Notes: generated by a model not told the origin, from the letters alone. Numbered from the stretch's first letter, positions 12,701 through 27,853 are shown. The stretch: 64,000 bases of DNA from Vitrella brassicaformis CCMP3155 (GCA_001179505.1 CDMY01000477.1:62001-126000), one strand, 5' to 3'. Translations and numbers: made by a program.

Positions 12701-13313
12701 TGGTATGGGTGGATCAATCTTCCTTGACAGAGCCTATGCGTACGTCCTGGCGTAGTGACGAGAGCCCCATGTCTCCGCAGGGTGGCGTGTTTGCCCCTGA
12801 CCAACTGTCTCACTACTTCCAGGCCGTCGACGAGTCGCCCATGTCCCCCGAGCCGACAGGAAGGCTGGCCAACATGGCAGCCGTTGCGAGGGCGGCAAGG
12901 GCCAGCCAGTTGACGGCAGCGAGGGCCAGCCAGCTGACTGTGCCACACATGCACCCGCGGCTGGCTAGCATCCAGCCTCTCTTCGACACATTTGAGATTG
13001 CCGGTCTGGCTGATGCATCGATACTCTCACCCTCACTCGGGGAGCCGAGGAGGCTCTTGGCGCCGCCAACACAACACCAACCGTAAGAAACAAACAAGAA
13101 GAGAACCAAGTTTGATTGACACTGTCACAGTTCACCCTGACACACATGCACGGAATTTCTCATGTCGTGCATGTCTGCATGTGCGTGTTCCCCCCCCGCA
13201 GGTCGTTGGATATGGGCGACGTCATCTCATCTCCACTTTCGAGAGTGGAGGAGGGACGACTCGTCAACGAGATACAAAGCGTGCCGAGTGAGCGAGACAC
13301 GGCTGCACGATAA
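6786..13313 (+). CDS. Ca2+-activated (BK/Slo-like) potassium channel with tandem RCK domains and a long C-terminal tail
   Basis: S1-S6 in exon 1 (S4 TRLLRVLRIYMLNR, pore DFFYLVICTVSTVGYGDLAP). RCK1: RHVLLCG, EVVLL, FLSGHVHSDTHLHRA, DELKLTLLGRSCHCPGISTLLLNLF. RCK2: NFILVVG, IVLLN, VWFVQGSG, YASGQV. Stop TAA 13311-13313. Confidence 0.9.
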
Positions 13314-13859
13314 GTGGATGGACGGATGGATGGATGGAGGGATGGAGGGATGTCAGCAATCCACAGATGCGTGGGGTGTGCGTTGGTTGGGTGCAGGTGT
13401 GGCCCCTCGTGCAGTGTCGCAACGGCTAAGAGAAGAGTTGAGGAGCTTGGCGCTACGATAGCGTGGCGTGGCGGGCTGCAAGGACGGAGGCATGATGTCT
13501 GTCAGAAGTCCCATACATCTGTAGGGGGGTGTGTTGTGTGTCGGGTCCAGTCAGCGTAGCAGACAGACAGACAGGCAGGCTGTGTGCCCTCAGTCACTGT
13601 CCATGTCGAGATAGCCAGGCAGCGATTAGGATGTGCAAACAAGCATTACGCCGTACGTCACGTCATCAATCACAGGTCTGTCTTCCATTAATGAATTGAC
13701 TCACTCACCGGTGGATTGATATTGAGCCTTTGGAAGGCCAAAACAAATCAACTAACACACGTACAGCAAGCTGAGCTATCTATGCATTCAGTGATTGCCT
13801 CAGTCAGCCAGTCCGTCAGTCAGTGACAGGCCACACCCATGCACCACACCACCAGAAGA

Positions 13860-16800
13860 TCATCCAGCCCCGAAGGGGTTGTGTCCCTCGTCATTGCCGC
13901 CTGAATCGTCACGCCTGGGCGACTTGGAACGACCGGACGGCCCCTTCCATATCTGATAGAGCCAGCCAGCCAGCCAGGGAGGGAGGCAGGGGTGGGATCA
14001 CAACACGACACCCAAGACACATCCGGCCATTCATGAGGGAGTGAGATTCTTCTCTCTCTCTGTGTGTGCGTGTGTGTGTGTGTGCTTGTGAGGGTGACCG
14101 TGAATCTTCTGGTCATGGAGGTGAGCGTCCATTTCTTGGATGACTTGTCGCCCCTGGGCGTCTCCTCGCCGCCCGATGCATCACCCGCCGCTGACGCACC
14201 ATTGTCGTTGGCCGCAGCTGACGCAGACCCTGATGTCGCACCAGCTACACGCGCAAACAACCTGCAACCACACACAGCCACCGTCGGTCCGTCAAGTACC
14301 GTCAAGTACACGTACATGTGGGTGTGGGTGGGATGTCGCCTGCCTCATCTATCTATCTATGTATCTATCTGTCTGTCTGGCTCACGTCTTCCTCTTTTGT
14401 GTAGGTGTGGATCTGAATTGCTGCTGTGTCTCAGTGTCCTCGTGTGGCGTCGCGTCGGCGTCTCGGCCCCTGTCGAGTGCGTTGAGCATCCCCCCGATGT
14501 GTCCACCCTCAGCCACCAGGCAGTCGGGCTTCTCCTCGAGTGTGCCAAGGAAGGCCGATATGTGCTCCAGCACACGAATGGAGTCGGGCGGCCCCGCCTT
14601 GTTACCCCCCTTGCCCCTGGAGCCCCCCGGGCTGGTGATGGAGTCTCGCCTGCCCGTCTCGACGGTGTGGATGCGGGGTGGGAGGTAGGGTGAGGCGACG
14701 GGTGGCAACGGGACGGCTTCGTCGATGTGCAGCTCGTGGGCGTAGTTCTTGAGGGCCATAAGGTCGCCGTACAGGAGGCCCAGCTCAGAGCTCTCGAACA
14801 TCTGCCCCTGGTGGCCCAAACACACCACCACCCACATCCACGCCTACACACACACACACCCCAACCAGACGGACGGACGGACAGAGAGCATGGCATGAAG
14901 CATATTCCATATGGTACCGGCTGGCCGAGCCATAAAGGCCTGGCATTACCTGCGCGACTTCGAGTAGGAACTGCTGTAGGAGGGGTGCGCGGAAGGCAGC
15001 GGGAGTCCGGGTGAAGAAGCGGTTCACGCTCTGATCAAATCAACGCCGGATTCGGTGGCCACGAACAGGGAATGTGTCCAGAGTGCGGTGCGTAGGGCGG
15101 ACGTGTTGGCTACCTGTCTGAATGACAGCACGACGTTTTCAAAGGGTGCCTCCTGCAGAGAGGGGGCGTAGAGGTCCATGAAGAAGGCCGACTGCAGATC
15201 CACATACACCATCCGACTCGCAACGTAACTGCATGGAAGGCCGACCGACCGATAAACAATGAAACAGACACACACACACACACACAGAGAGAGAGATGCA
15301 GTACCAGGGGGCCCGAGAGCTCGTCTGACAGCGTGGCTGCGTACCGTGCGATAGCAAAAGCGGTAGAGTGTACGATCTCGACGCACTTATCGATGCCCTC
15401 CCGCAGCACCTCCTCCATCGACTCGACGCTGGCCAGTGCCACCATCCTGCCCATGCCCTCACCACGCTGCTGCACGGACGCGTCGCTCTCACCCACACCC
15501 TGCTGCTGCTGCTGCTTGTTTGAGCGGCCCGCCCCGTCCTTGACCTTGGAGTGTTGTGTGGTGGGGCTGGGCGGCAAGTTGAGTGCGGTGCGGATGGGTG
15601 CGATGAGGGGGTCACTGACGGCGGCGTCCTTCTTGGCCATGGTCATGAACTTGCCGACGATCTGCTCCAGCTGACTGATGAAGAAATGCAAATTGTGCAG
15701 CCGCAACAGCACCTCCGGTAAAGACTGACGCAACACATACTCCGGAACCTGACCACATAACAGAGATCAGCGGGCGCCCCGCACGCACAACCAACAGGCA
15801 GAGCCAACATGCATTGCATGATTATCCGGCAATCCAATCGATCCGCGTGCCGTGCCGTGCGTGTGTCTCTTTTTTTCTGGATACATTGCCGTCTATGCGT
15901 GCCTGCGTCCCTTGCTTCTTGACGATTGATTCGCTTACTTCGAGTAGAGCTGTGGTGACGGCCCCGCAGTTGCACTTGCCCTCTGTCTCCTCTGCGTCTG
16001 CCCCCTGGTCCCCCTCGCCCTCCTTCTTGTCGCTGAGTCCTCTCATGACCCCCACACCGCCGAAGAATGACATGCGCATGATGGACTTGCCCCGCTGCTT
16101 GTCCTTCTTCTTGTGCTTGCTCTGCCGCCGACTAGACCACCGACCACCCCCTGGGCTAGACGTGTCGGACTTGTTGCCGCCCTCACCGTCATCGCTGTCC
16201 GACCCCGCCTCGTGACCCGACTCGGCCCCCGTGTCAGACTCACCACTGATGAAGCAACACCAGACACACACACCAACAGCCGAAGTGCATACAGGTATAC
16301 GGGTTGACTGACGAGCATGCAGAGGAGAACGTCTGTCCACTCCCCCAGCCCAGCGGGTCTGACCACCGACCCACCCACTGACCCACCAACGTACCCTGAT
16401 GTGTCCCGTCCGATCTTGTCCGATGGCATGAATATGCGCAGCAGTGCCTGCTGGCCCGCTGTCAGCGGAGTCGACTTCCTGACGGGGGGCACTGGCCCTT
16501 TGGCCGCCGACATGAAAGTGGGTTTGGTGGGCGCCGATGACGACTTGGCGGCGGCCGCTGCAGCTGCAGGGGGCTCCTTGAACCGATCCACCAGGGTCTG
16601 CAAGTGTCCCACACCGCACCGCACGAACACACACGAGTAGACAGGTAGGTGTCGTTGTGTGTGGCGAGTGTGCTACGATAGACGGACCTGGAAGTTGGTG
16701 CTGCATCTGGGTCTGAGTTTGAAGAGGCCCACCCCATCGCACTGCCGTCTCAGCGCACCGCAGTAGGTCGACGTCAGACGGCTCAAAAAACTCAGCAAAG

Positions 16801-17089
16801 AAGGCAAAAACCTGTTTGTAGACACATCCAATCACACATCATACCGAGCATAGGCCACATGTGTTCGCATAAATGAGATAAATGAATGTCGTATTTGTGA
16901 GATGTCCGGCATCAATTGCGTGTGTGCCGGTTGGTTGGTTGTGTTGGGTGACCAGTCGAGGGGCGGGTTGAGGTCCATCATGGCCTCGAATATTTGGAAG
17001 ACGAACGAGAAGAGGTCGATGACCGACGACGAGTGCAGCACGTCAGGCGGGGCGATGGGCCGCCACTGCTCATTCGCTATGCACCTACA

Positions 17090-17127
<38 letters not shown>

Positions 17128-20100
17128 ATGAGAATGAGAGAGAGATGTCCGTCCGTCCATCCCACGCCTCATCTCATCTCTTTGTGTGCGGCCTGCCCTG
17201 CCCTGCCCTGCCCGCCCCCGTCCATTCGTTCCATTTGTCCCTCCCTCCCTCCATACCTGTGCAGGACGTCTTCAACAGACCTGAATCTGTTGGCGAGTGT
17301 TGCGGCCAGTACGGGCGCCAGGAGGTCCATGAGGTCCGGCTCGCTCGGCAAGTGCACTCCAGTCGACAGACGCACCTGACCCACCAGCAGCTCAAAACTC
17401 CGCACATTCTGGACAAGTAAGTACAGTCAAGAGAGAGAACAAGGACAACGAAGGCGTGACTGACAAAGGAGGCGCATTCATTCCTTTGTGTATGTATGTG
17501 TGGGTGGGTAGAGCACCTACCTTGATGACTTTCTCTCCGCCAGGCGGTATGTCAGTGTCCGCCCAGTAGGGCGACCCCAGCATGGCCTTCATCGCACCAT
17601 GCAGCACAAATCGACCCTGTCCACCGGACAGACAACACACACCACACCACACACCACCAGTATTGCGACACATCACACCCCGTGCACGTGCTGTGCTGTG
17701 CTTACGGTGTACATGACGATTGCCGGGTGCTGGTTGTCCGGTAGGAAGTCCCTCCAGACGGGGGCGAAGTACTGCAGCTCGCACCGCACCTCATTCACAA
17801 ACGACTCCATCGCCGTACCGAACGACGACACCACCTCGTAACGCTCCTTGTCAAACTGACAGGACACACAGACACATACCATCCATCAGCCAGCCACACC
17901 ATGGATGGATGGGGGCACAGATATCAATCAACGAGTGAGGGGCCCCCATATTATTATGTCTGTGCGATTCGGTTGTCACGCCGCCAAACCGCCCTGACCT
18001 CTTGGTCCTCTTGCGATGGGTTGTCTTGGTCTGTCCGCAGCATCTTGAGTGAGGTGGCTGCGTTCTGCGCCAGCTGGATGGCCGCCATGACGGGGTCAAA
18101 CAGACGGTGAAACATCCCGCGACACGTGCTGCACACGAAGTACCTGCAAAGGAACCAACCACACAAAACAAATGAACCAACAAAGGGAGTGTGCGTGGAT
18201 GTCTGTCTGTCTGTCTGTCTGTCTGCATGTCTGACACACAGGGCTGGCTGAGGAACACACTTGCACGTGTATGTCACGTGTGCGTGATGTGATGGATGAG
18301 TGTTTGGGACTGACTGACATACCTGAGTATGTCTTCTTGTATGGAGGGTCCATTGAGTATTTCGCTGAGCGGCCTGTCGTAATATCCCTCGCGCCTCGAG
18401 GCCCTGGCGGTGCTGCGCGAGGTGCTGTGGCCAGTCGACAGACCGCCCTCAAACATCTTCTTCGCACCCCGACCCCCGCCCTCCTCGGCAGGACCGTCTG
18501 ACAGACAGACAGACAGACGCTACACAACTCTGTGTGACGGTCGCCCTCGCTTTCTCCAAACACTCATCTCATTGGTTCCTTCCTTTGTTCCCTGCCTGCC
18601 TCGCCCACCCCGTTAGCTGACTGGACTGACCTTGTTTGGTGTCTGTCTTGGTGGGCATGCCTGAAATCTTGACCCTCATCATGCCCTGCATCTTGGTCCA
18701 CACCGTCAGCAGCGGCCGCAGACTCTCGGGCTCCAGCCGCAGGCGGTAGTCAGATAGCACGGCCGCCATCTCATCGCGGCACACACCAGCCAGCGACCGC
18801 CGCAGACACAGCTCATATACAACTCGCTCCACACGACCAGCACTGCTCAGCGACACACCCACCAACCGCTTGGGTTTGCCCTCCTGCTGCGTGGCCGCTT
18901 CAAGTGGCAGACAGCACCACTCCTCAGTCACAGGCACCTGTGCGGCGGCGGCGGTGTGCTGTGCCTGCGGCATGGCGACGACAAGGGTGGCGTTGAGGCC
19001 AGCGCCGAGGCTGCGTGGGACGACCGATATGATGCGCCCGACAGGCGTGGCCTGTCGCTTCTCCGGCGGCACATCGGTGGGGTCGAAGTCGGAGAAGAGC
19101 CAGGCTGAGAAGCCGCCGATGATGCTCTGGAGGGACTCGACGGCGGCCACGGGGGGGACCACGATCGAACCCGTTTCCTGAGACGCCTCCTGACGTAAGG
19201 GAGCCAATCCAATCCCCACACACATACACACACGATAGCCATATAATACACCAAGCACTGCACTGCACTGCACCCACCATATATGCATACAAGTGCACGA
19301 GTGTCCGTGTGTGCGTGTCCCCCGTGCGTGCGTACATCGGTAGTGATGTCTGCGAACTCATCGGCGTCATCGCCGGCCTTGGCGACCTCCCTCCAGAGTG
19401 CCTGGCAGCAGAGCACTGCATGTGTGTCGAGGGCCATGCAGGGCAGCAGGGGCCCCGGGTCGCCCCCCTTGCCACTGCCCCCTCCCCCCGGCCGTCTGGG
19501 GCTGGGGGCCACCCGGCCCGCCTGGGCCATGTGGGCGCATATCACCAGGGCACGAGCGATACGGGGGGCCTCCAGGTGCAGCCGGCTAGGCGAGCTGCTG
19601 TCGGTGCAGGCGCGGTACAGATACGAGAAGAACAGCTGCAGCAGGGGGGAGTCGTACCGCCAGTACGAGTGACGACCGAACCACACACCATCCTCTGATG
19701 AATGGATGAAAGGATGAATGAAACGACCGACATTCAGAGGAGGTCAGGTCGTCTGTGTGCTGTGCTGTGCTGTGCGCATCCGTCTGCAGACCTACCGGTA
19801 AGGATTCCGTCGATATTCCTCCGTGACTTTCTCCTTTGTGTGATTTTGGGTTCCTCCTTGCCCGACTCGTCTCCAGGTGCTGCGGCTGGGCCAAGGTGGC
19901 CGGTAGCAGTCCTGGCCCTGGTCGCCCGACGCCGCATGGGGTCTCTCTTGGGGTGGGCCCCATCCGACACCTCATCCTCAAACCCCACACCCTTGCCGCC
20001 ATGGCCAGAGGAGCTGGTCGAGGGCAGCGCAGACATGTGGCGGCCGCCGGCCCCCTTCTTGCGGTCGTCGGGTCGCGGCTCTGGGCTGGGTGAGTGGGAA

Positions 20101-23100
20101 CTGGCGCTGCCTGACCGCGACTCCTCGGCTTCAATGGGCAGGGCTTTTCCGGGGGACGACCCGTCCCCTTCAGACGCACTCGACCCTCGATCGCTGCCCT
20201 CCTGCGGATTGCGGCGGTGCGACTTGCGCCGCCCTCCTGACTTGGATGAGGGGCGGGCCGTGTCGGGGCTGTTGCGGTCTGCCGTGAGTGCCACGCGGCT
20301 CCTGATGTTGGCATCCAGCCTCTCGATGCATGTCATGCAGTGCAGCAGACGATACAGCCCCTTCCTGGACGCCCACTTGCTCCTGGTGGCCTGCTGGCCG
20401 GTAGTGGGGCTCGGTGCAGTGGTGCCCCAGTGGCCTGCGTCAAGGGCGTCCTGGAGGATGGTGATGGTCTCGGCCCCCTCCTCAAGATAGAACCGCAGGG
20501 CCGATGGCCTCGCATCAAAGGACGCAACGGCCGGATCGCTCTGGGGAGCCCGGGCGGATGTCGATGGGGCCTTGGACGGCGACACAAAGCGGTACAGACG
20601 CTGCACCCTGTGAAGGAATGCCAAACCGAGGAGGTGCAGCTGACGAGACACCCAATCGCGAAACGCCTTCTGGCCACCCAGACGCTGTCCTGGCTTGTCC
20701 GGGTTGTCGTCACCTGACAGGAACACAGGCACACAGGCAGGGCGGACGGACGGACATGACATCCACTTGTTGTGGGTCGGTCTTGTCGACACGACACATA
20801 TATGCCATGCGTGTGTATGCGCGAGGACTGACTGGCTGCTCTACTGATCTGATGGATGGATGGATGGATCCGTTCTTTGTTTCCCCCCCTCCCCCCCCCC
20901 TCGGTGGCTCACTTGCGTGTTGCCATGATTCGATAAGCCTGATGACTCTGTATCTGAGGTCCATGGGGTGCAGGGTGGAGGCCCCACCGCCGCTCGACCC
21001 AGACAGCTCGTTGGCGTCGGGCAGCGTCAGATGCACTATCATCTCGTGCAGACGCTGAGGGATACCCAGCCGAACCCTGCAGCCACACCACCCCAGCAAT
21101 GGACGTATGTATGCATGTATGAATGAATGAATGCATGTACACAACACAACACACACCATGGACGGACGGACCAACGCCACCCGCCCGCTTCATCCACTTG
21201 CGTCCCTGCCTGCCTGCCTGCCTGTCTGTCTGGGTGTGTGGGTGTGTGGGCTGGCTGACCTCATGAGAGTGACGACACTCCTGAAGAGGTCTACAATGGC
21301 TTCGTGTTCCATGCGTGCGACCTTGTCCATTTTTTTGTCGCCCCTGCGTCCCCCCCCGGGGGTGTCGTCGGCACCGGCCACGTCAGCCAGGAGGATCGTC
21401 TTGGCCGCCGTCTGTGTGACCAGATGCTGGAAGCCAAGCAGCAGCACTTCATACGACAGACAACTCCACTGCAGGTCATCCATCTTGGCCGAACCCCACT
21501 GCACACCACCGCCCAACGAGCTCAGCTGCAGACATCCGCACACACACAAGACGGCACGTAAGTCTCGATGCGGGTTTCCTTCCAGTTGGATTGCGTGCAT
21601 GTTGGGTGCCTTCCTTGAGTGGCCTGCCGGCTGTGCTGCCTGTCTGTCTGCCTGTCTGTCTGTCTGTCTGCCTGTCTGTCTGTCTGCCTGACCTTGATGG
21701 GTTTGGCAGGTGCGAGGTGGGTATGTGAGGGTGCGCCAACAGGCAGGTCGATGTGTCGCTCCAGCACCGCACTGCCCTTGTAGAAATCCTTGGCAAACCA
21801 GTCGCGATGGGCAGCCGCTCCACCTCCCTCGGACCCCTCACCGGCCTTGCCCTTGAGGTCTTTGTGTTGGGGCCTGGCCGCCTCGGCGTGGCTGCAGAAA
21901 GCCAGCAGCCGCTCCTCGTGCTGCTGCTGCACCTCCACCCACTTGTCAGTCGCCCTACGATTCGACATCCTCTGGAGGGAAACACAGACAACCCAACACA
22001 CATGGAATTGATGGGATGGATGGCTCCATCGATGAGTAAGTGGATGAGTGGATATATGCAGGGAGGGGCCCCACAAACGAAACATGAGCGGGCGGAAGCG
22101 CAAGTAGGCAGGCCAGCTGTCTACGACTCACTGAGGTACCTACCTTCATGTTGACGAAGGTGTCCTTCTTGCGCTGGTCGGCGAGGTCGTCCGTGCCGCC
22201 CGCCCAGGTGGCCATGAGCTGGTCGGCCCGTTGGCGCATCTCCGATAGGACAGCCCCGACGGCAGCACTGGCAGGGCCCGGTGGACCCTTGTCGTCACTC
22301 AGTCGCGACGACTGGCGGGCCTCGTAGTACCGGTGCTTGGCCGCCGTGGTGCCTTGGCCTTCCGTCGAGAATGAGTAGATGCGGCCCTCATCGTCGGTCT
22401 TCCTGCGGAGGTCGCCAGCCGCCCCTGTTGCTGCCTGGGAGAGATGCTTGAGGTCCAAGTGGGGGACAGAGGCCTGCGGGGATGACACGCTGGAGCGGCC
22501 GGCACTCTGCCGCACATCGGACACACCCACCTTGGCCGGTGGTGCAACTGCAGGTGGTGCAGCTGGTGCGGCCGCCCCTGTTGCCGTGTGGAAGTCCTCA
22601 GCAGACCCCCCTCTGCGGCTGGTGGGAGGGGTGCTCCCGCTGCTGACGGATCGCTGTTGACCGAACCCTCCGGTCTCCTGGCGTCTCCAGCCGGGGCGAG
22701 CAGCGGTGGCAGGACCACCAGGACCCTCAAAGCCCTGCGTCGTCCGCAAACCAGCAGGAGGGCGTGTCGAGAGTGCGGCGTCGGTCCGTGGGTGTGGGGC
22801 AGTCGCCAGTCCCGGTGGTGGGGACTCCTGGCGTGAGGTAAAGAACATGTCGATGCCGGTGTCGATCATGCCCGCCAGCTCGGGGGATGAGGGAGACGCC
22901 TCCCTCTGCTGCTGATGGTCACCATGCCGAGGCTGTCCTTCTTGTGGTGGTTGTGTCATGATAGCTGCGTCAGGGAGGCGCGCTTGGTCGGTAACCGCGC
23001 GTTGGGGGACTGGGCTTTGCGACCTCGCTCCATTATCACTGCTGATGATGGATGGCGCCTCCCCGGCCCAGTCCCCCCTGGCCCCCCCCTGCTGCTGCTG

Positions 23101-25193
23101 CTGATGCTGCTGCTGCTGCTGCTGACCCTGACGCTGCTGAGAGGGCCCGCGCCGCAACCGCTGACGCGCACTCGTGATGGCCGCCATGTGTGCTGGGGTT
23201 GTGGAGTCGTCCTCGTCGCCCATGGCCTGGTGGGCGGCCTGGCCATGGCCAGGCCCACCGCCCCGTGCACTCATGGGGGGTGTCGTAACTCGCCCTGCAA
23301 CCCCCTGCTGCGACACCTGTCGGTCGGTGTCGACGGCCATGGGTGCAACGCCACCCCCATCGACTGCCCCGACCCGGGGATGCTGCTGACGGCTGGCGCT
23401 TCCTATGGTGGCCGGGGGTGATGGCAAGGCAGCATCGGTGGATGTGCGCTTGGATTCCAGCTGTCGGATCTTGTCCTTAAGCATGGTGCCCTCTGACTTA
23501 AGGATGTCATTCTGGTTGATCAAGGTCACCTCGCGGACGCGGACCTTCTGCAGGTCATCCTGTGCCCTGTTGAGGTCTGCCTTGGCCACAGCCACCTGCC
23601 TGTCCCGATCATCCAGCTCCCGCTGCAGCCTCTCCACCTCCTGCCGCAGCGACCCGTCCAGCGGATCCAGCCGTGGACCGTGATCGGCCGTCGGGAACCG
23701 GGCGGGGGATGGTGGTCGAGCAAGGGGGGAACCCGCACCAGTCGTGTAGCGCTCTGCACGACGCCTCGCCTCCGCAGGAGGGACCTGCACAGACCAGCAC
23801 AGACACACACATCATACATACATACATCATGGTGGACTCATTCAGGCAGGTCGGTCGGTCGATTAGGTCACTCACCTTAAGTTTTTTGGTGAGAAAGTGC
23901 TCCATGTCGCCCGCTGGGTCAAAACTCTCCACCTGACGAATGTACTCGTCAAGCGAGACGGTGAAGTCCTCTCGAAAGTGATGCAAAGCCTAACGCACAA
24001 ACAGAACAACAAACACTCCCACTAACTCAGAGCTGGGCGGTAAGCAGGTCAGTGAGGTACTTACCTTGGCCCATCCCCTTAGGCTATCTCGCATGGCGTT
24101 GAGTCGCGCGGCCTCGAGCGACTCCAGCTTGTCAACCTCGTCAGGCGACCCGGACACACGCAGACCGGGGGCATTCAGCCTGCACATCACATCACATCCA
24201 GCAAAGCCATTCATTCATCCGTCACACCCGACAGACAGACACAATAGTTATGTCTATTTCAGCGAGTGAGTGAGTGAGTGGCTGATGGATGGATGGATGG
24301 ATGAGGAGGTCACTGACTCACTGACTCACTCACTCTGCGGTGGCCCTTGCGAGTTGGTCGACGGCATTGGCCTGGTTGGCGAATGCGGCCTGGATGCGCC
24401 GGTCAGCCTTGTCCAGCACCACGGCTGCCAGCTTGTTGCCGAAACGCTTCACCAACTCCTCCTTATTCAGCACAGCACGCTGACCGTCCGAGGGAGGGAG
24501 GGAAAGAGGGAGGTCCAAATAAATCACACACATCAAGGCAGAGGCAGTAAGTAAGAATTTGGCTGGAAGCATCTCTCTCTTCATCTCTCTCTGCTGTTTG
24601 TTTGTTTGTTTGCGTGTGTATGGTGCCTGCCTTGGCTTGGCAGGCAGCGCACCTCTAGCTCTTCATCTGCTTTCCTCTTGTGCGCCTCGGCCTTTGCCAC
24701 CTCCTCGGCAGCAGTGGCGCGGTCCCCCTGCCCCCCCTGTTTGTCGGGCTGCCTCTGGTCGGGGCTCCTGGACCGGCCGCCCGACCCCCGCCCCTCAGTC
24801 TTGATCTTGGCGATGGCATCGCCCAGCGGCGGCAAGGCCAAAGCCTCCAGCGTGGCGACCAGCTGTGTGGCCTGCTGACCCAGCTCCCCGAGCAACGTGA
24901 GCCACCCTTTGCCGGCATCCTGCTGACCACCCTCCTCCTTGTGCAGCAAAGGGGATAACTTGCTGCTGCTCTGCCGGTGGGTGCTGTCAAGGCGAGATGC
25001 CAGATCCTTGACAACACCTATCACACTCCGCTCTGACTCAACCAGGGCCTGCAGAAAGGTGGGATTCATCCAGGCCAGCACAACACAAACACACACAGGG
25101 ATCCCTGTGGCTTGACATAGAAGGGTGGTTGTTCATCTGTCTGTCTATCTGCTGACTGTCGTCCACCTGAATGCTCCCCAGGTCGAGCATCAT
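13860..25193 (-). CDS. Large protein: N-terminal F-BAR-like helical domain, low-complexity/coiled-coil linker, Munc13-homology (MUN/DUF810, PATROL1-like) domain, C-terminal NPF motif
   Basis: ATG 25193 (MMLDLGSIQ|ALVESERSVI). LESLEAARLNAMRDSLRGWAK and EYIRQVESFDPAGDMEHFL resemble the F-BAR terminal helix. The large exon ~22146-23782 splices in frame to RMSNRRATDKW. DUF810-like blocks: HSYWRYDSPLLQLFFSYLYRAC, ELQYFAPVWRDFLP, EQWRPIAPPDVLHSSSVIDLFSFVFQIFE, FFMDLYAPSLQEAPFE. Ends GHNPFGAG*. Confidence 0.72.
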
Positions 25194-25279
25194 GACTTAA
25201 GGTGTCGCTCTTCACATATCGGCTCCTCCTTCACCGGCGATTAGCAGATTTCACTGCTTCCCTCCCACCCCTTCACGCG

Positions 25280-25302
25280 AAGCTCGCCGCCCCTGCGAGC
25301 TT
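25280..25302. promoter_or_regulatory. Inverted AAGCTCGC-N7-GCGAGCTT pair in the F-BAR-MUN/ArfGAP promoter
   Basis: Perfect 8-bp inverted repeat. Confidence 0.65.
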
Positions 25303-25400
25303 AGCCGAAAAAAGAAGGCAAGGAGGACAAGCACAGAGCCCCCATCGTGTTCCGGCAGCCGGCATCGCCTGGGACGAGGGCCACAGGAGGACCACAGGCC

Positions 25401-27853
25401 ATGGCTCAGAAACAGCTCAAGCTGGCGAATGATCAGCTCAACGACATCGTGACGGACCCAGCCAACAGATTTTGTGCTGACTGCGGCGCCAAAGCACCGA
25501 GATGGGCTTCGGTCAACCTTGGAGTGCTGGTCTGCATCGAGTGTTCCGGCATACACCGCAATCTGGGCGTCCACATCTCCAAAGTCAAGTCACTCACACT
25601 CGACAAGTGGCAGCAAAAGTGGATTGACGTAAGCCAACCACCCAGCCAGCCAGCGGAGCGGAGCCTACCCGCGTCGGGCACTGCTTGTTTGGGTCATGTC
25701 AGACGGTAAAGGCTATTGGCAACGAAGTGGCTAGGGAGTACTACGAGTTCCGGCTCCCCTCAGACTACCGCAGACCCACTCATGCCGACGGCGTCAGGTC
25801 AGGCAGGGTCAGGCAGACAGACAGACGGACAGGCCGATTACAAGCCTGCGTTGCGTGGGTTGGCTGTGTGTGGCCGCGCCGCTTACCCTACTGCCTGCAG
25901 CGCGTTGGAGAACTGGATCCGTTCCAAGTATGAGAAGAAGCTGTACGTCCCGGTGGGCAAACCAGAGCCGTGGGAGCTGCTGGAGCAGGGTACGTGCACA
26001 CTCGCAGAGACCAGCGCTTGCAGGGCGGGCACAGCGGCCAGCACTTAGTTGATTCATGGCTGCCTCCCTCGATTTGTCTGTCGGCAGGTTTGGACCCCCG
26101 GAGCTCGGTGCAAAATGAAGGGGAGGGGCGATCGAAGAGCAAGTCAGTCACAGTCACGCGACAGACACTGTCCATGCCAGGAAGATGCTGAGAGGCCACT
26201 CACTCACTCATCTGATTGATTGCATGTGTCTGTCTGTCTGTCTCATGTGTGTGCGGTTTGCTGCACAGGAAAGAGCGCAAGGAGAAGGCCAGACGGGAGA
26301 GGTCAGCGAGAAGTCAGTCAGTCATGCGCGCACCTATCTGATGTCGGTCGATTCATTCATGCCTGCCTGCCTGCCTCTGATCCATCCACCAGACCTGAGC
26401 CCGTGAGTGCTCCCGAGGACGAGCGTGACAGGGAGGGTGGTGGGATGCGTAAACTGAAGCCTCCCCACGGCCCTCACGGGGCGGGCAAGTCGCGGAACAG
26501 ACCCCACTCACAGGGGGGGCAGGCAGCCAGACCCATACACAGCGACCAGGAAAGAGGGTAAGACAGACACACACACACACAGAGAGACAGAGAACTAGCC
26601 ATACACAGACAGCCGACGGCACCGCCACAGGTGGACGGACGGACGGATGCGGCGTGTGTGTGTATTCTGTCTGTAAACTAGGTACTCGCCGTCTCCGTTG
26701 CCGCACATGGCGACGCGCCAGCCGGCGCCGCCGTCCCCGCAGGGGTCCCCCGTCGATCCATTTCAGTCAATCGACCTCATCGGCGGACCGCCCGCCGCAG
26801 ACAACATGCACAAGCAGCAGCAGAAGCCCCAGGATGCGCCCAGCGACTGGCACCACATCTGGGCAGGCGCGGATCCCTTCAACGCCAATCCTCAGACCGG
26901 ACCACAGCAGACTGCGCCTCCCCAGCCGCTGGTTCAGCAGCAGCAGCAGCCTCATGCAGGTCCGTCGAGTGGGCTCGACTCCATTTTCGGTGCGCCCGAG
27001 CCGTCCAAGGCGCTGGAGGGGGATTTTGGGTCGCTCAAGCTGACAGGCGAGAGCCCTCCTGCGCCCATTGAGAGTGTCATGACTCTCCCATACGGCAACG
27101 GCACTGGCACTGCGACGGGCACCGGGGGGATCACGGGGCCGGGGTTTGCGTCAACCGACGCGTGGGGGGGACAGCCGCAGCCCAATCAGGGCATCCCACA
27201 CGATCCAATGACCTTTGGGTGGCCAAAAACAGACCGTAAGCTAAGCTAACAGCAGACACAGAGACTTTGCTGACAGGTCTGTATGTATGTATGTGATGGG
27301 TGTATTGTATGTGGTCAATTCATCAGGTCCAGCTGGTGCGGCAGAGACGGCGGCGCAGGGCCGAAGCCCGACGGCCGAGCAGCTGCAGGAACTCAAAGTG
27401 GCACAGGCGAAGGAATCAATCGCCAGACTCTTCACTGCACCCAAACAAATGGGTCAGTAGAGTGCAGCCAGGGCCTTTGTCACAACGTCTAGCCAAGAGG
27501 ACATCGTGCTCTGTCTGCTGTGCCGTTGCGGCGTCCCCTTCAGGCTTCGGCACTCCTTCTTACCCCTCGATGGTAGGTATCCTTCTCTCGATTGTGTTCA
27601 CACTCACCTGTTCAGGTGGAGACAGTCCATCCACGTCTCCTTGCCTGTCTTTTTGCCTGTCTCTCAGATTCCCTATGGCTTTGACGCTCCCACCAGCGCT
27701 TTCAATTTTGGCACCAAGACCTTCGCTTCCGGCAGTAGTGGCGGCCCACCAGGAGCATCTCAAACCTCCTTTCAACAGGGCAGCCGACCAATCACAGCAC
27801 CACAACTGGACAACAAGGGGTCGATGGGACGGCAAGACGTAAGCGCACACACA

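What the first reader, a model, noticed from the sequence alone, without database searches (positions are those of the whole stretch)
13860..25193. Apparent F-BAR + Munc13 MUN (DUF810) fusion ending in an NPF motif
Seen: one in-frame exon chain, including the junction ...FVNMK|RMSNR across a ~173-nt GT-AG intron, links an F-BAR-like N-terminus to a MUN/PATROL1-like domain, with GHNPFGAG* at the end. Known: F-BARs bend membranes, MUN domains tether and prime SNARE fusion, and NPF binds EH domains. I do not recall this combination. Inference: a protein coupling exocytic priming to membrane curvature or endocytosis, relevant to alveolate regulated secretion.
Basis: partly seen in the sequence, partly recalled or inferred. 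Interest (0 to 1): 0.72.

Follow-up and report, generated by a model that had tools for sequence, protein, structure and literature searches.

The report
One gene joining F-BAR-like and MUN domains
This alga (Vitrella) makes one very long protein joining a probable membrane-curvature-binding part to a part like the one nerve cells use to ready vesicles for release; the pairing recurs in gregarine parasites and I found no paper that describes it.

Summary
On the minus strand, 27 GT-AG exons (25193 to 13863, stop at 13862-13860) encode 2593 residues. This is exactly the public Vitrella brassicaformis protein CEM16379.1 / A0A0G4FPM7, named only "MHD1 domain-containing protein".

Two assemblies together support 23 of the 26 introns and the GHNPFGAG* end.

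- **MUN domain (about residues 1610-2470): well supported.** Pfam PF25761 scores above its cut-off. The model aligns to Munc13-1 MUN at Z 19, clear of other tethering folds.
- **N-terminal F-BAR (residues 1-290): moderately supported.** Foldseek's top 27 PDB hits are all F-BARs. A profile of the orthologues hits Syp1 and PACSIN1 F-BARs colinearly (E 0.1-0.3). Language-model features point to FCH clusters. Against this, Pfam FCH is not hit, Z is only 10-12, and the model is mediocre.
- **Architecture is conserved.** Single open reading frames with both ends occur in two other transcriptomes, and the gregarine Ancora has a copy with a shorter N-terminus.
- **NPF motif: probably chance.** It is unique to Vitrella.

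No C1, C2 or PH domain was found. The likeliest role is a membrane-anchored tether and priming factor for vesicle fusion, but that is inference. It is a new domain combination of known parts.

The parts
13863..25193 (-). Coding sequence of 27 exons, 2593 aa. Identical to Vitrella brassicaformis CCMP3155 CEM16379.1 / UniRef100_A0A0G4FPM7 ('MHD1 domain-containing protein').
   Evidence: Exact mapping of P0005 onto the window. Identity of P0005. Spliced RNA contigs.
23713..25193 (-). F-BAR-like N-terminal domain, aa 1-290, in exons 1-5 and the start of exon 6. Long helices at residues 5-44, 53-94, 116-191 and 202-249, with a low-complexity loop at 86-119.
   Evidence: AF2 model, pLDDT 65.5. Foldseek top 27 PDB hits are all F-BARs, with FCHO2 at E 1.6e-5. 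VIA-align gives FCHO2 Z 11.8 and Syp1 Z 10.8 at rmsd 4.5. Profile A1 hits Syp1 and PACSIN1 F-BARs. ESM features point to FCH clusters at 0.90. Pfam FCH is not hit.
24083..24124 (-). Motif LESLEAARLNAMRD (aa 209-222). It aligns with the helix-4 motif (EE)KRL..LK of PACSIN1 and YNRLDTLK of Syp1. E212 and R215 are invariant in the four orthologues.
23434..23658 (-). Single long helix or coiled coil, aa 309-383, conserved in the orthologues.
22144..23433 (-). Disordered Q/P/S/G-rich linker, aa 384-813, in the rest of the 1641-nt exon 6. It contains a (CTG)12 = poly-Q repeat at 23089-23124.
   Evidence: Sequence. Tandem repeat. Transcribed in X6.
21972..22143 (-). Intron 6, 172 nt, GT..AG.
   Evidence: The joint 21971/22144 is skipped in X6 contig record 15 and retained in the DNA-like run X8. 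Splice sites read.
20217..21971 (-). Conserved helical region, aa 814-1215, in exons 7-10. No Pfam family. There is a weak lead to CATCHR tethering folds (Exo70, COG3, COG6).
   Evidence: 27-31% identity to three orthologues, with 51 invariant columns. ESM features 0.80-0.84, a lead only.
18788..19796 (-). Conserved region before the MUN domain, aa 1356-1609. Fold not resolved (pLDDT under 50).
   Evidence: No Pfam hit.
14502..18787 (-). MUN domain of Munc13 type, about aa 1610-2470, in exons 12-25.
   Evidence: VIA-align: Munc13-1 Z 19.4 and 19.0 (448 of 530 residues, rmsd 5.3), MUN-CD Z 18.9 (278 of 297, rmsd 3.9), Munc13-4 Z 18.3. Other CATCHR folds score Z 12-17. Foldseek top 6 are Munc13-1 MUN. 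Profile A2 hits Munc13-1 at E 0.05. Pfam PF25761 scores 35 bits against a cut-off of 27.
16997..17041 (-). Motif HSSSVIDLFSFVFQI (aa 1916-1930). It aligns with ALFSCSVVDVFSQLNQ at the start of the Munc13-1 MUN C-terminal module.
   Evidence: Weak exon-level Pfam hit.
15957..16588 (-). Disordered insertion of about 160 aa inside the MUN domain, aa 1990-2150, A/S/K/D-rich.
   Evidence: pLDDT 25-35 and no secondary structure. Poorly conserved columns in A2.
14745..15391 (-). Stretch matched by Pfam PF25761 TPR_PATROL1 (aa 2276-2389, profile positions 207-319).
   Evidence: The same family is hit in the orthologues.
13863..14501 (-). Disordered C-terminal tail, aa 2471-2593, ending GHNPFGAG. The NPF lies at 13872-13880.
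   Evidence: Present in cDNA contig L004. NPF is absent from the orthologues.

Best explanation
This is one transcribed gene for a 2593-residue cytosolic protein. It has a divergent F-BAR-type domain and a coiled coil at the N-terminus. A disordered linker of about 430 residues follows, then two conserved helical regions, then a Munc13-type MUN domain. It has no C1, C2 or PH domain. The proposed mechanism is inferred, not shown. The F-BAR-like domain dimerises and holds the protein on a curved or anionic membrane, so taking the place of the C1-C2B membrane anchor of Munc13. The long linker lets the MUN rod, possibly extended by further CATCHR-like bundles, reach incoming vesicles. There the rod would tether them and promote SNARE assembly together with a Sec1/Munc18 protein. 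The fusion would put in one chain what fission yeast does with separate proteins, where the F-BAR protein Rga7 recruits the MUN protein Ync13. The terminal NPF is probably a chance motif.
For: Single gene: exact 27-exon mapping of the public protein. The frame is open through all RNA-confirmed junctions. Spliced contigs come from two independent assemblies. The orthologues P0003 and P0004 carry both ends in one ORF, and P0003 is a complete 7.4-kb transcript seen in three runs. MUN. F-BAR-like. No C1/C2/PH: whole-protein Pfam scans of all four proteins return only PF25761. Precedent in trans: the Ync13-Rga7-Rng10 module (PMC12574955).
Against: Pfam FCH (PF00611) is not hit even at E<=1. The N-terminal model is mediocre (pLDDT 65.5, pTM 0.33). 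Its VIA Z of 10-12 lies under the tool's own caution line of about 13 for helical proteins, and many F-BAR superpositions have rmsd 25-30 A. A shape-only search of the ESM Atlas gave generic helical hairpins. The first 300 residues are net neutral, 45 K+R against 45 D+E. Dimerisation, membrane binding and any SNARE activity are untested. The Ancora orthologue starts at about Vitrella residue 165-200, so it may lack a full F-BAR or be truncated at the 5' end. The MUN model has low overall confidence (pLDDT 49.5).
Confidence: 0.6

Rival explanations
1. The architecture is real, but the N-terminal domain is only a BAR-superfamily-like or coiled-coil dimerisation module with no role in membrane curvature. 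The protein would then be a dimeric MUN/CATCHR tether brought to membranes by partners.
For: There is no Pfam FCH hit. Z scores fall in the range the tool calls common for helical bundles, and BAR, I-BAR, SNX-BAR and plain hairpins are mixed among the hits. The shape-only search is generic. The domain has no net positive charge.
Against: Foldseek's top 27 hits are all F-BARs from about ten different proteins. Profile-to-sequence hits to Syp1 and PACSIN1 are colinear and include the helix-4 E..RL..LK motif and the following F-D/E-P..D motif. Language-model features point to FCH clusters, and all ten best named hits share a family or clan.
Confidence: 0.22
2. The C-terminal rod is a general CATCHR vesicle-tethering subunit (exocyst-, COG- or Dsl1-like) acting in a tethering complex. 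It would not be a Munc13-type SNARE-priming factor.
For: MUN and CATCHR folds are homologous, and Sec6, the exocyst, M-Sec and Tip20 score Z 13-17. The middle region 814-1215 gives weak Exo70/COG leads. The residues Munc13-1 uses to open syntaxin were not examined.
Against: The four best structural matches are Munc13-1 and Munc13-4 (Z 18-19), with near-complete coverage of the MUN domain. The only sequence-level PDB hits are Munc13-1. Pfam assigns the PATROL1/Munc13-like family. UniProt's rule names an MHD1 domain.
Confidence: 0.15
3. The fusion is an artefact. Two neighbouring same-strand genes, an F-BAR gene and a MUN gene, were merged by the gene model and by short-read assembly across the GC-rich exon 6, which has few stop codons.
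For: No single listed contig bridges the CAG repeat at 23078-23139. Short-read contigs here do merge neighbouring genes: cDNA contig L004 runs on into the convergent plus-strand neighbour. Long chance ORFs are common at 65% G+C.
Against: The frame stays open for 2593 codons across 26 introns. X6 covers every bin of exon 6, with contigs ending only at the masked repeat. P0003 and P0004, from other organisms, carry homologous N-terminal and MUN regions in single ORFs, and P0003 lies on a 7.4-kb transcript with both UTRs. There is no room for more upstream exons, because a divergent ArfGAP gene starts about 200 nt away.
Confidence: 0.03

Closest known systems
Munc13-1 / UNC-13 (C1-C2B-MUN-C2C) and Munc13-4
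   Same: A MUN rod of four helical-bundle subdomains. It is the best structural match (Z 18-19, 448 of 530 MUN residues aligned) and shares the S-x-SV-x-D-x-F motif.
   Different: No C1, C2 or calmodulin-binding region was detected. The N-terminus is F-BAR-like instead. There is a 160-residue disordered insertion in the MUN domain and about 800 extra conserved residues upstream of it.
Plant PATROL1 / DUF810 proteins (PMC3731666)
   Same: This is the Pfam family actually hit (PF25761 TPR_PATROL1). It is also a Munc13-like protein without C1 or C2 domains.
   Different: As far as I know, PATROL1 has no F-BAR or other membrane-binding domain and is much shorter. Here only profile positions 207-319 of 419 are matched.
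Fission yeast Ync13-Rga7-Rng10 module (PMC12574955)
   Same: An F-BAR protein and a MUN protein work together to target and fuse secretory vesicles at a defined membrane site. This is the same pairing of activities.
   Different: In yeast they are separate polypeptides, linked through Rga7 (its GAP domain, according to that paper's AlphaFold3 model). Here they are one chain, and no RhoGAP domain was found. Homology between this F-BAR-like domain and Rga7's was not tested.
TgREMIND (TGME49_259720; PMC11615899, bioRxiv 10.1101/2023.03.19.533351)
   Same: An alveolate protein with an N-terminal F-BAR, a long disordered linker and a C-terminal helical regulatory domain. It acts in secretory-organelle biogenesis.
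   Different: Its C-terminal domain is REMIND (SBF2-like), not MUN, and it has about 800-odd residues. No SBF2 or REMIND signal was found here.
FCHo1/2 and yeast Syp1 (F-BAR + muHD endocytic nucleators)
   Same: These are the best structural (FCHO2) and sequence-profile (Syp1) matches of the N-terminal domain. They also have an F-BAR followed by a long disordered linker.
   Different: There is no mu-homology domain here. FCHo/Syp1 act in endocytosis. The one endocytic hint in this protein, the NPF, is not conserved.

Membership tests
F-BAR (FCH-BAR / EFC) domain | Sequence match to the FCH region (Pfam PF00611) | tested here: not met
   No FCH hit at E<=1 in P0005:1-420 or in the first 600 residues of the three orthologues. 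There were also no exon-wise hits.
F-BAR (FCH-BAR / EFC) domain | About 250-300 residues forming three long antiparallel helices plus short flanking helices | tested here: met
   The AF2 model has helices at 5-44, 53-94, 116-191 and 202-249, with short helices at 253-263 and 269-280. Helix pLDDT is 70-88.
F-BAR (FCH-BAR / EFC) domain | Structural similarity to solved F-BAR domains, above other helical folds | tested here: inconclusive
   Foldseek's top 27 hits are all F-BARs, E 1.6e-5 to 1e-3, probability 0.99-1.00, but TM is only 0.2-0.38. VIA-align puts FCHO2, Imp2, GAS7, Syp1, srGAP2 and Hof1 at Z 10.5-11.8, below the tool's caution line of about 13 for helical proteins. The Atlas shape search is generic.
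F-BAR (FCH-BAR / EFC) domain | Sequence-level homology to known F-BARs over helices 3-4 | tested here: inconclusive
   Profile A1 against PDB sequences gives Syp1 at E 0.1 and PACSIN1 at E 0.23-0.34. The matches are colinear (145-285 against 143-285) and share the E..RL..LK and F-D/E-P..D motifs. ESM features point to FCH clusters at 0.90 with 176 shared features. The E-values are above the usual significance level.
F-BAR (FCH-BAR / EFC) domain | Homodimer forming a shallow crescent with a basic concave face that binds and bends membranes | not testable with these tools
   No multimer prediction or assay is available here. Residues 1-300 are net neutral, which does not settle the question.
Munc13-type MUN domain (MHD1/MHD2; Munc13, BAP3, CAPS, PATROL1) | Family profile match above the curated threshold | tested here: met
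   PF25761 TPR_PATROL1 scores 35.0 bits against a cut-off of 27 in P0005. P0002 scores 51.5, P0003 34.6 and P0004 23.7, the last just under the cut-off. UniProt names it 'MHD1 domain-containing protein'.
Munc13-type MUN domain (MHD1/MHD2; Munc13, BAP3, CAPS, PATROL1) | Elongated rod of stacked helical bundles that superposes on solved MUN domains better than on other CATCHR proteins | tested here: met
   VIA-align gives Munc13-1 Z 19.4, 19.0 and 18.9 and Munc13-4 Z 18.3. Sec6 scores 17.4 and the exocyst, M-Sec and Tip20 score 13-14. Foldseek ranks 1-6 are Munc13-1 MUN. Caveat: model pLDDT is 49.5 overall and 60-85 in the aligned helices.
Munc13-type MUN domain (MHD1/MHD2; Munc13, BAP3, CAPS, PATROL1) | Residues used by Munc13-1 to open syntaxin (the 'NF' pocket) and SNARE/Munc18 binding | not tested
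   No residue-level structural alignment was available, and no assay was possible.
Munc13 proper (UNC-13 orthologues) | C1 and C2 domains flanking the MUN domain | tested here: not met
   Whole-protein Pfam scans of P0005, P0002, P0003 and P0004 give only PF25761. So it is not filed as a Munc13 orthologue, only as a MUN-domain protein.

The most novel reading that the evidence does not exclude
This F-BAR-MUN protein is a lineage-specific answer to the 'missing Munc13' of apicomplexans and their algal relatives. It would be a priming and tethering factor that finds its fusion site by membrane shape or lipid, through a dimeric F-BAR, instead of by Ca2+/DAG-sensing C1/C2 domains. It would act at fixed exocytic sites of the pellicle. 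Its fusion would be Rosetta-stone evidence that F-BAR-MUN coupling, seen in trans in fission yeast, is an ancient and general way to place vesicle fusion.
Probability: 0.2. Interest if true: 0.8.

Novelty: new variant of a known kind. Interest (0 to 1): 0.55.

Why it matters
How alveolates prime and place vesicle fusion is poorly known. A 2021 review states that Toxoplasma encodes nothing resembling a MUN domain (PMC7999867). A 2026 paper calls regulated exocytosis largely unexplored in unicellular eukaryotes (PMC13739732).

A conserved MUN-domain protein in chromerids and gregarines gives a concrete candidate. Its usual Ca2+/lipid-sensing domains appear to be replaced by an F-BAR-like membrane module. 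That leads to a testable idea: fusion sites may be chosen by membrane shape.

It also parallels, in a single chain, the F-BAR (Rga7) and MUN (Ync13) partnership shown in fission yeast in 2025. The claim is limited in three ways. The gene model was already public. The F-BAR call is moderate. No function has been tested.

Tried and rejected
**Searches that led nowhere**
- Exon-by-exon Pfam scans by reference gave only two weak, colinear PATROL1 hits and nothing for the N-terminus.
- Exon-wise phmmer against PDB sequences gave nothing useful.
- All three word-index protein searches failed. P0005 residues 1366-1940 and alignment A4 returned nothing, and P0002 residues 960-1347 returned only itself. 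The cluster representative of the window's protein is a 983-aa fragment outside the length filter, and relatives at 30% identity share too few words. These blanks say nothing about how widely the family occurs.
- The ESM Atlas shape search with the N-terminal model gave generic hairpins.
- I could not name the organisms of P0003 (SRR25454952, SRR25454955, SRR25454957) or P0004 (TSA GHVP01).

**Errors of my own that later evidence corrected**
- My codon-usage dynamic-programming gene model reached the same stop codon but misplaced several small exons. The public model replaced it. Orthologue conservation (for example APLEW.LP.FL.FLSRLT) and cDNA L004 support the public model.
- I first read two gaps in L004 as introns in the 3'UTR. 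Their ends are CT..AC on this strand, so they belong to the convergent plus-strand neighbour.

**Readings rejected**
- TgREMIND orthology: there is no SBF2/REMIND signal.
- Munc13 orthology: there are no C1 or C2 domains.
- NPF as a conserved EH-binding motif: it is absent from the orthologues.

**Rule followed**
The identical public protein returned by a tool (P0005) was used by id instead.
- Exons were joined inside local scripts, to check the reading frame, to draft a trial gene model and to verify equality with P0005.


Full report
**What is in the sequence**

Six-frame translation shows a chain of open segments from about 25200 down to 13860. The window is about 60% G+C. Earlier notes of this scan call the genome a Vitrella-type chromerid alga, and I confirmed that below.

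Pfam gave only two weak but colinear hits to PF25761 (PATROL1-like TPR). One was at 16835-17173 (profile 19-60) and one at 15027-15386 (profile 221-260). Nothing was found for the N-terminal exons.

**Transcript evidence**

Public runs that hold the stretch were found and laid on 19400-25399.

- **Run X6 is spliced RNA.** One 7363-nt contig runs 23077-22144 | 21971-21697 | 21527-21260 | 21076-20909 | 20709-19796 | 19694-19400 and continues 4466 nt beyond.
- **Other X6 contigs** skip 23785-23875, 23990-24064 and 25049-25166. One ends exactly at the donor of intron 2.
- **Run X8** keeps the introns, so it is DNA-like.
- **The only gap** between X6 contigs is 23078-23139, a (CTG)12 poly-Q repeat that the tool masks.

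With these introns removed the frame is open throughout.

**The gene model is already public**

A search of 1.84 billion representatives with the ORF at 18572-19357 gave four proteins. The best, P0001, is the C-terminal 983 residues of the window's protein. Its cluster also holds P0005, which is CEM16379.1 / UniRef100_A0A0G4FPM7 from Vitrella brassicaformis CCMP3155. P0005 has 2593 aa and is named "MHD1 domain-containing protein".

P0005 starts MMLDLGSIQ and ends GHNPFGAG. It maps without a mismatch onto 27 exons, 25193 to 13863, with TGA at 13862-13860.

The contig that encodes P0001 (JGI 3300017148, locus L004, 4161 nt) is a cDNA spliced exactly as exons 11-27, and it includes the terminal exon. 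Together the two assemblies support 23 of the 26 introns directly: 1, 4-10 and 11-25 or 26. Intron 2 is supported at its donor. Intron 3 rests on the model and the open frame.

A divergent ArfGAP gene begins about 200 nt upstream of the start codon, so there is no room for further 5' coding exons.

**Conservation of the architecture**

The other three hits are large proteins:

- P0002, from the gregarine Ancora sagittata, 1774 aa.
- P0004, from transcriptome assembly GHVP01, 1981 aa.
- P0003, 2341 aa, encoded by complete intron-free 7.4-kb transcripts in three RNA runs of an unidentified organism.

blastp aligns P0005 to them in four blocks:

- N-terminus: 5-305 against P0003 36-355 (E 1.6e-6), and 202-397 against P0002 43-230 (E 9e-9).
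- Residues 820-1207.
- Residues 1314-1988.
- Residues 2150-2472.

P0003 and P0004 carry the whole N-terminal domain. Ancora's ORF begins at about Vitrella residue 165-200. So the two ends are joined in single ORFs in at least three organisms. This, together with 2593 stop-free codons, makes a merged-gene artefact very unlikely.

**The MUN domain**

- **Pfam.** PF25761 scores above its curated cut-off in P0005 (35 bits against 27), P0002 and P0003.
- **Sequence profile.** A profile of the four C-terminal halves (A2) finds only Munc13-1 MUN structures among PDB sequences (E 0.05-0.1). It aligns HSSSVIDLFSF with ALFSCSVVDVFSQ.
- **Structure.** An AF2 model of residues 1360-2480 is poor overall (pLDDT 49.5) but reaches 60-85 in the helical core. 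Aligned to every PDB representative, its four best matches are Munc13-1 (Z 19.4; Z 19.0 with 448 of 530 residues at rmsd 5.3; MUN-CD Z 18.9, 278 of 297, rmsd 3.9) and Munc13-4 (Z 18.3). Exocyst, M-Sec, Tip20 and other CATCHR proteins follow at Z 12-17. Foldseek ranks 1-6 are also Munc13-1 MUN.

I take a Munc13-type MUN domain at about residues 1610-2470 as well supported. It has a disordered insertion of about 160 residues (1990-2150). No C1, C2 or PH domain is detected in any of the four proteins. It is therefore a MUN-domain protein like plant PATROL1, not a Munc13 orthologue.

**The F-BAR-like domain**

Pfam FCH is not hit, even at E<=1. Four other lines point the same way:

1. **Sequence profile.** A profile of the four N-termini (A1) gives Syp1 F-BAR (E 0.1) and PACSIN1 F-BAR (E 0.23-0.34) among its six PDB hits. 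The matches are colinear (145-285 against 143-285). The alignments include the helix-4 motif E..RL..LK and the following F-D/E-P..D motif. E212 and R215 are invariant in the orthologues.
2. **Foldseek.** The AF2 model (pLDDT 65.5, pTM 0.33) is all-helical, with long helices at 5-44, 53-94, 116-191 and 202-249. Foldseek's first 27 PDB matches are all F-BAR domains of about ten different proteins, with FCHO2 at E 1.6e-5.
3. **Exhaustive alignment.** VIA-align puts FCHO2, Imp2, GAS7, Syp1 (rmsd 4.5 over 159 residues), srGAP2, Hof1 and FES at the top, at Z 10.5-11.8.
4. **Language-model features.** They place residues 1-300 nearest to FCH clusters, at 0.90 with 176 shared features.

Against this:

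- The Z scores lie under the tool's caution line for helical proteins.
- Many superpositions have very large rmsd.
- A shape-only search of the ESM Atlas is generic.
- The domain is net neutral.
- Dimerisation could not be examined.

I put F-BAR homology at about 75%, and a membrane-binding function lower than that.

**The rest of the protein**

- Residues 309-383 form a conserved coiled coil.
- Residues 384-813 are a disordered, Q-rich linker.
- Residues 814-1215 are conserved with no Pfam family. Language-model features give only a weak lead to Exo70/COG-type CATCHR folds (0.80-0.84).
- The NPF at 2588-2590 is the only one in the protein, with 0.08 expected. It sits in a disordered tail and is absent from all three orthologues, whose tails do not align. 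I treat it as chance or as specific to Vitrella.

**Mechanism**

Shown: one mRNA and one ORF, the two predicted folds, their conservation together, and the absence of C1/C2/PH domains.

Inferred: the F-BAR-like domain dimerises and anchors the protein to a curved or anionic membrane, replacing Munc13's C1-C2B anchor. The flexible linker lets the MUN rod capture vesicles and promote SNARE assembly with a Sec1/Munc18 partner.

The nearest functional precedent is the fission-yeast module in which the F-BAR protein Rga7, with Rng10, recruits the MUN protein Ync13 to target and fuse vesicles (PMC12574955). Here the two activities would be fused in one chain.

The rivals are a non-membrane dimerisation role for the N-terminus, a general CATCHR tether rather than a priming factor, and a merged-gene artefact. 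They are scored in their own sections.

**Novelty**

Full-text searches found no paper that holds both MHD1 and F-BAR. None of the papers listed for 'MUN domain' together with apicomplexan or chromerid names contained 'MUN domain' at all. "F-BAR" plus "MUN domain" returned only the yeast work. The two BAR-domain proteins characterised in Toxoplasma, TgREMIND and TgBAR2, are different proteins. A 2021 review says T. gondii has no MUN-like domain.

The gene model and its MHD1 label are public. The F-BAR-like reading and the conserved F-BAR-MUN combination appear to be undescribed. I class it as a new variant (domain architecture) of known kinds.

**Limits**

- The spread of the family beyond the four proteins is unknown. 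The single big search used one exon as query, and the three word searches were blind here.
- Both models rest on four-sequence alignments.
- No hand-joined spliced model was sent to any tool. The identical public protein was used by id.

Noticed in passing
window 25305-25706 (+): A divergently transcribed ArfGAP gene lies next to this gene (Pfam PF01412, E 4.6e-30). Its first in-frame ATG, near 25401, is about 200 nt from this gene's ATG at 25193. The two membrane-traffic genes are therefore head to head on a short shared promoter region.
   Followed up: partly
window 18793-18842 (-); L004 around position 470: The JGI cDNA contig L004 lacks 50 nt inside exon 12, which shifts the frame. The gap has non-canonical ends and is flanked by the short repeat (G)CTGGT. 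It removes the codons of the most conserved motif, GRVERVV.EL..RRSL. It is probably an assembly or reverse-transcription artefact, but a real alternative product is not excluded.
   Followed up: partly
window 13083-13201 and 13288-13396: Beyond this gene's stop codon, cDNA contig L004 skips two stretches of 119 and 109 nt. Their ends are CT..AC on the minus strand, which is GT..AG on the plus strand. They are introns of a convergent plus-strand neighbour whose transcript overlaps this gene's 3' end. The unstranded assembly merged the two transcripts.
   Followed up: partly
window 21631-21690, 18200-18233, 13315-13352, 17107-17145: Introns carry tetranucleotide microsatellites, (CTGT)n and (TGTC)n, which read as 'DRQTDRQT' in translation. 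There is also an (AG)n run. These are the places where read contigs break.
   Followed up: no
window 20217-21971 (-), aa 814-1215: This 400-residue region is conserved, with 51 invariant columns across four proteins, and has no Pfam family. Language-model features give weak Exo70/COG3/COG6/Vps52 leads. It may be further CATCHR bundles upstream of the MUN domain.
   Followed up: partly
run X2 on window 20595-21065: Run X2 is recorded under a different organism label (B) than X1 (A) in the same study. It nevertheless holds an identical spliced contig across intron 9, with no differences. The same organism or its RNA is therefore present in both runs.
   Followed up: no
L002 positions 1-25: The 5' end of one P0003 transcript contig begins with Illumina adapter sequence directly before the transcript. 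This suggests the contig reaches the true 5' end of the mRNA. No dinoflagellate-type spliced leader is present.
   Followed up: no
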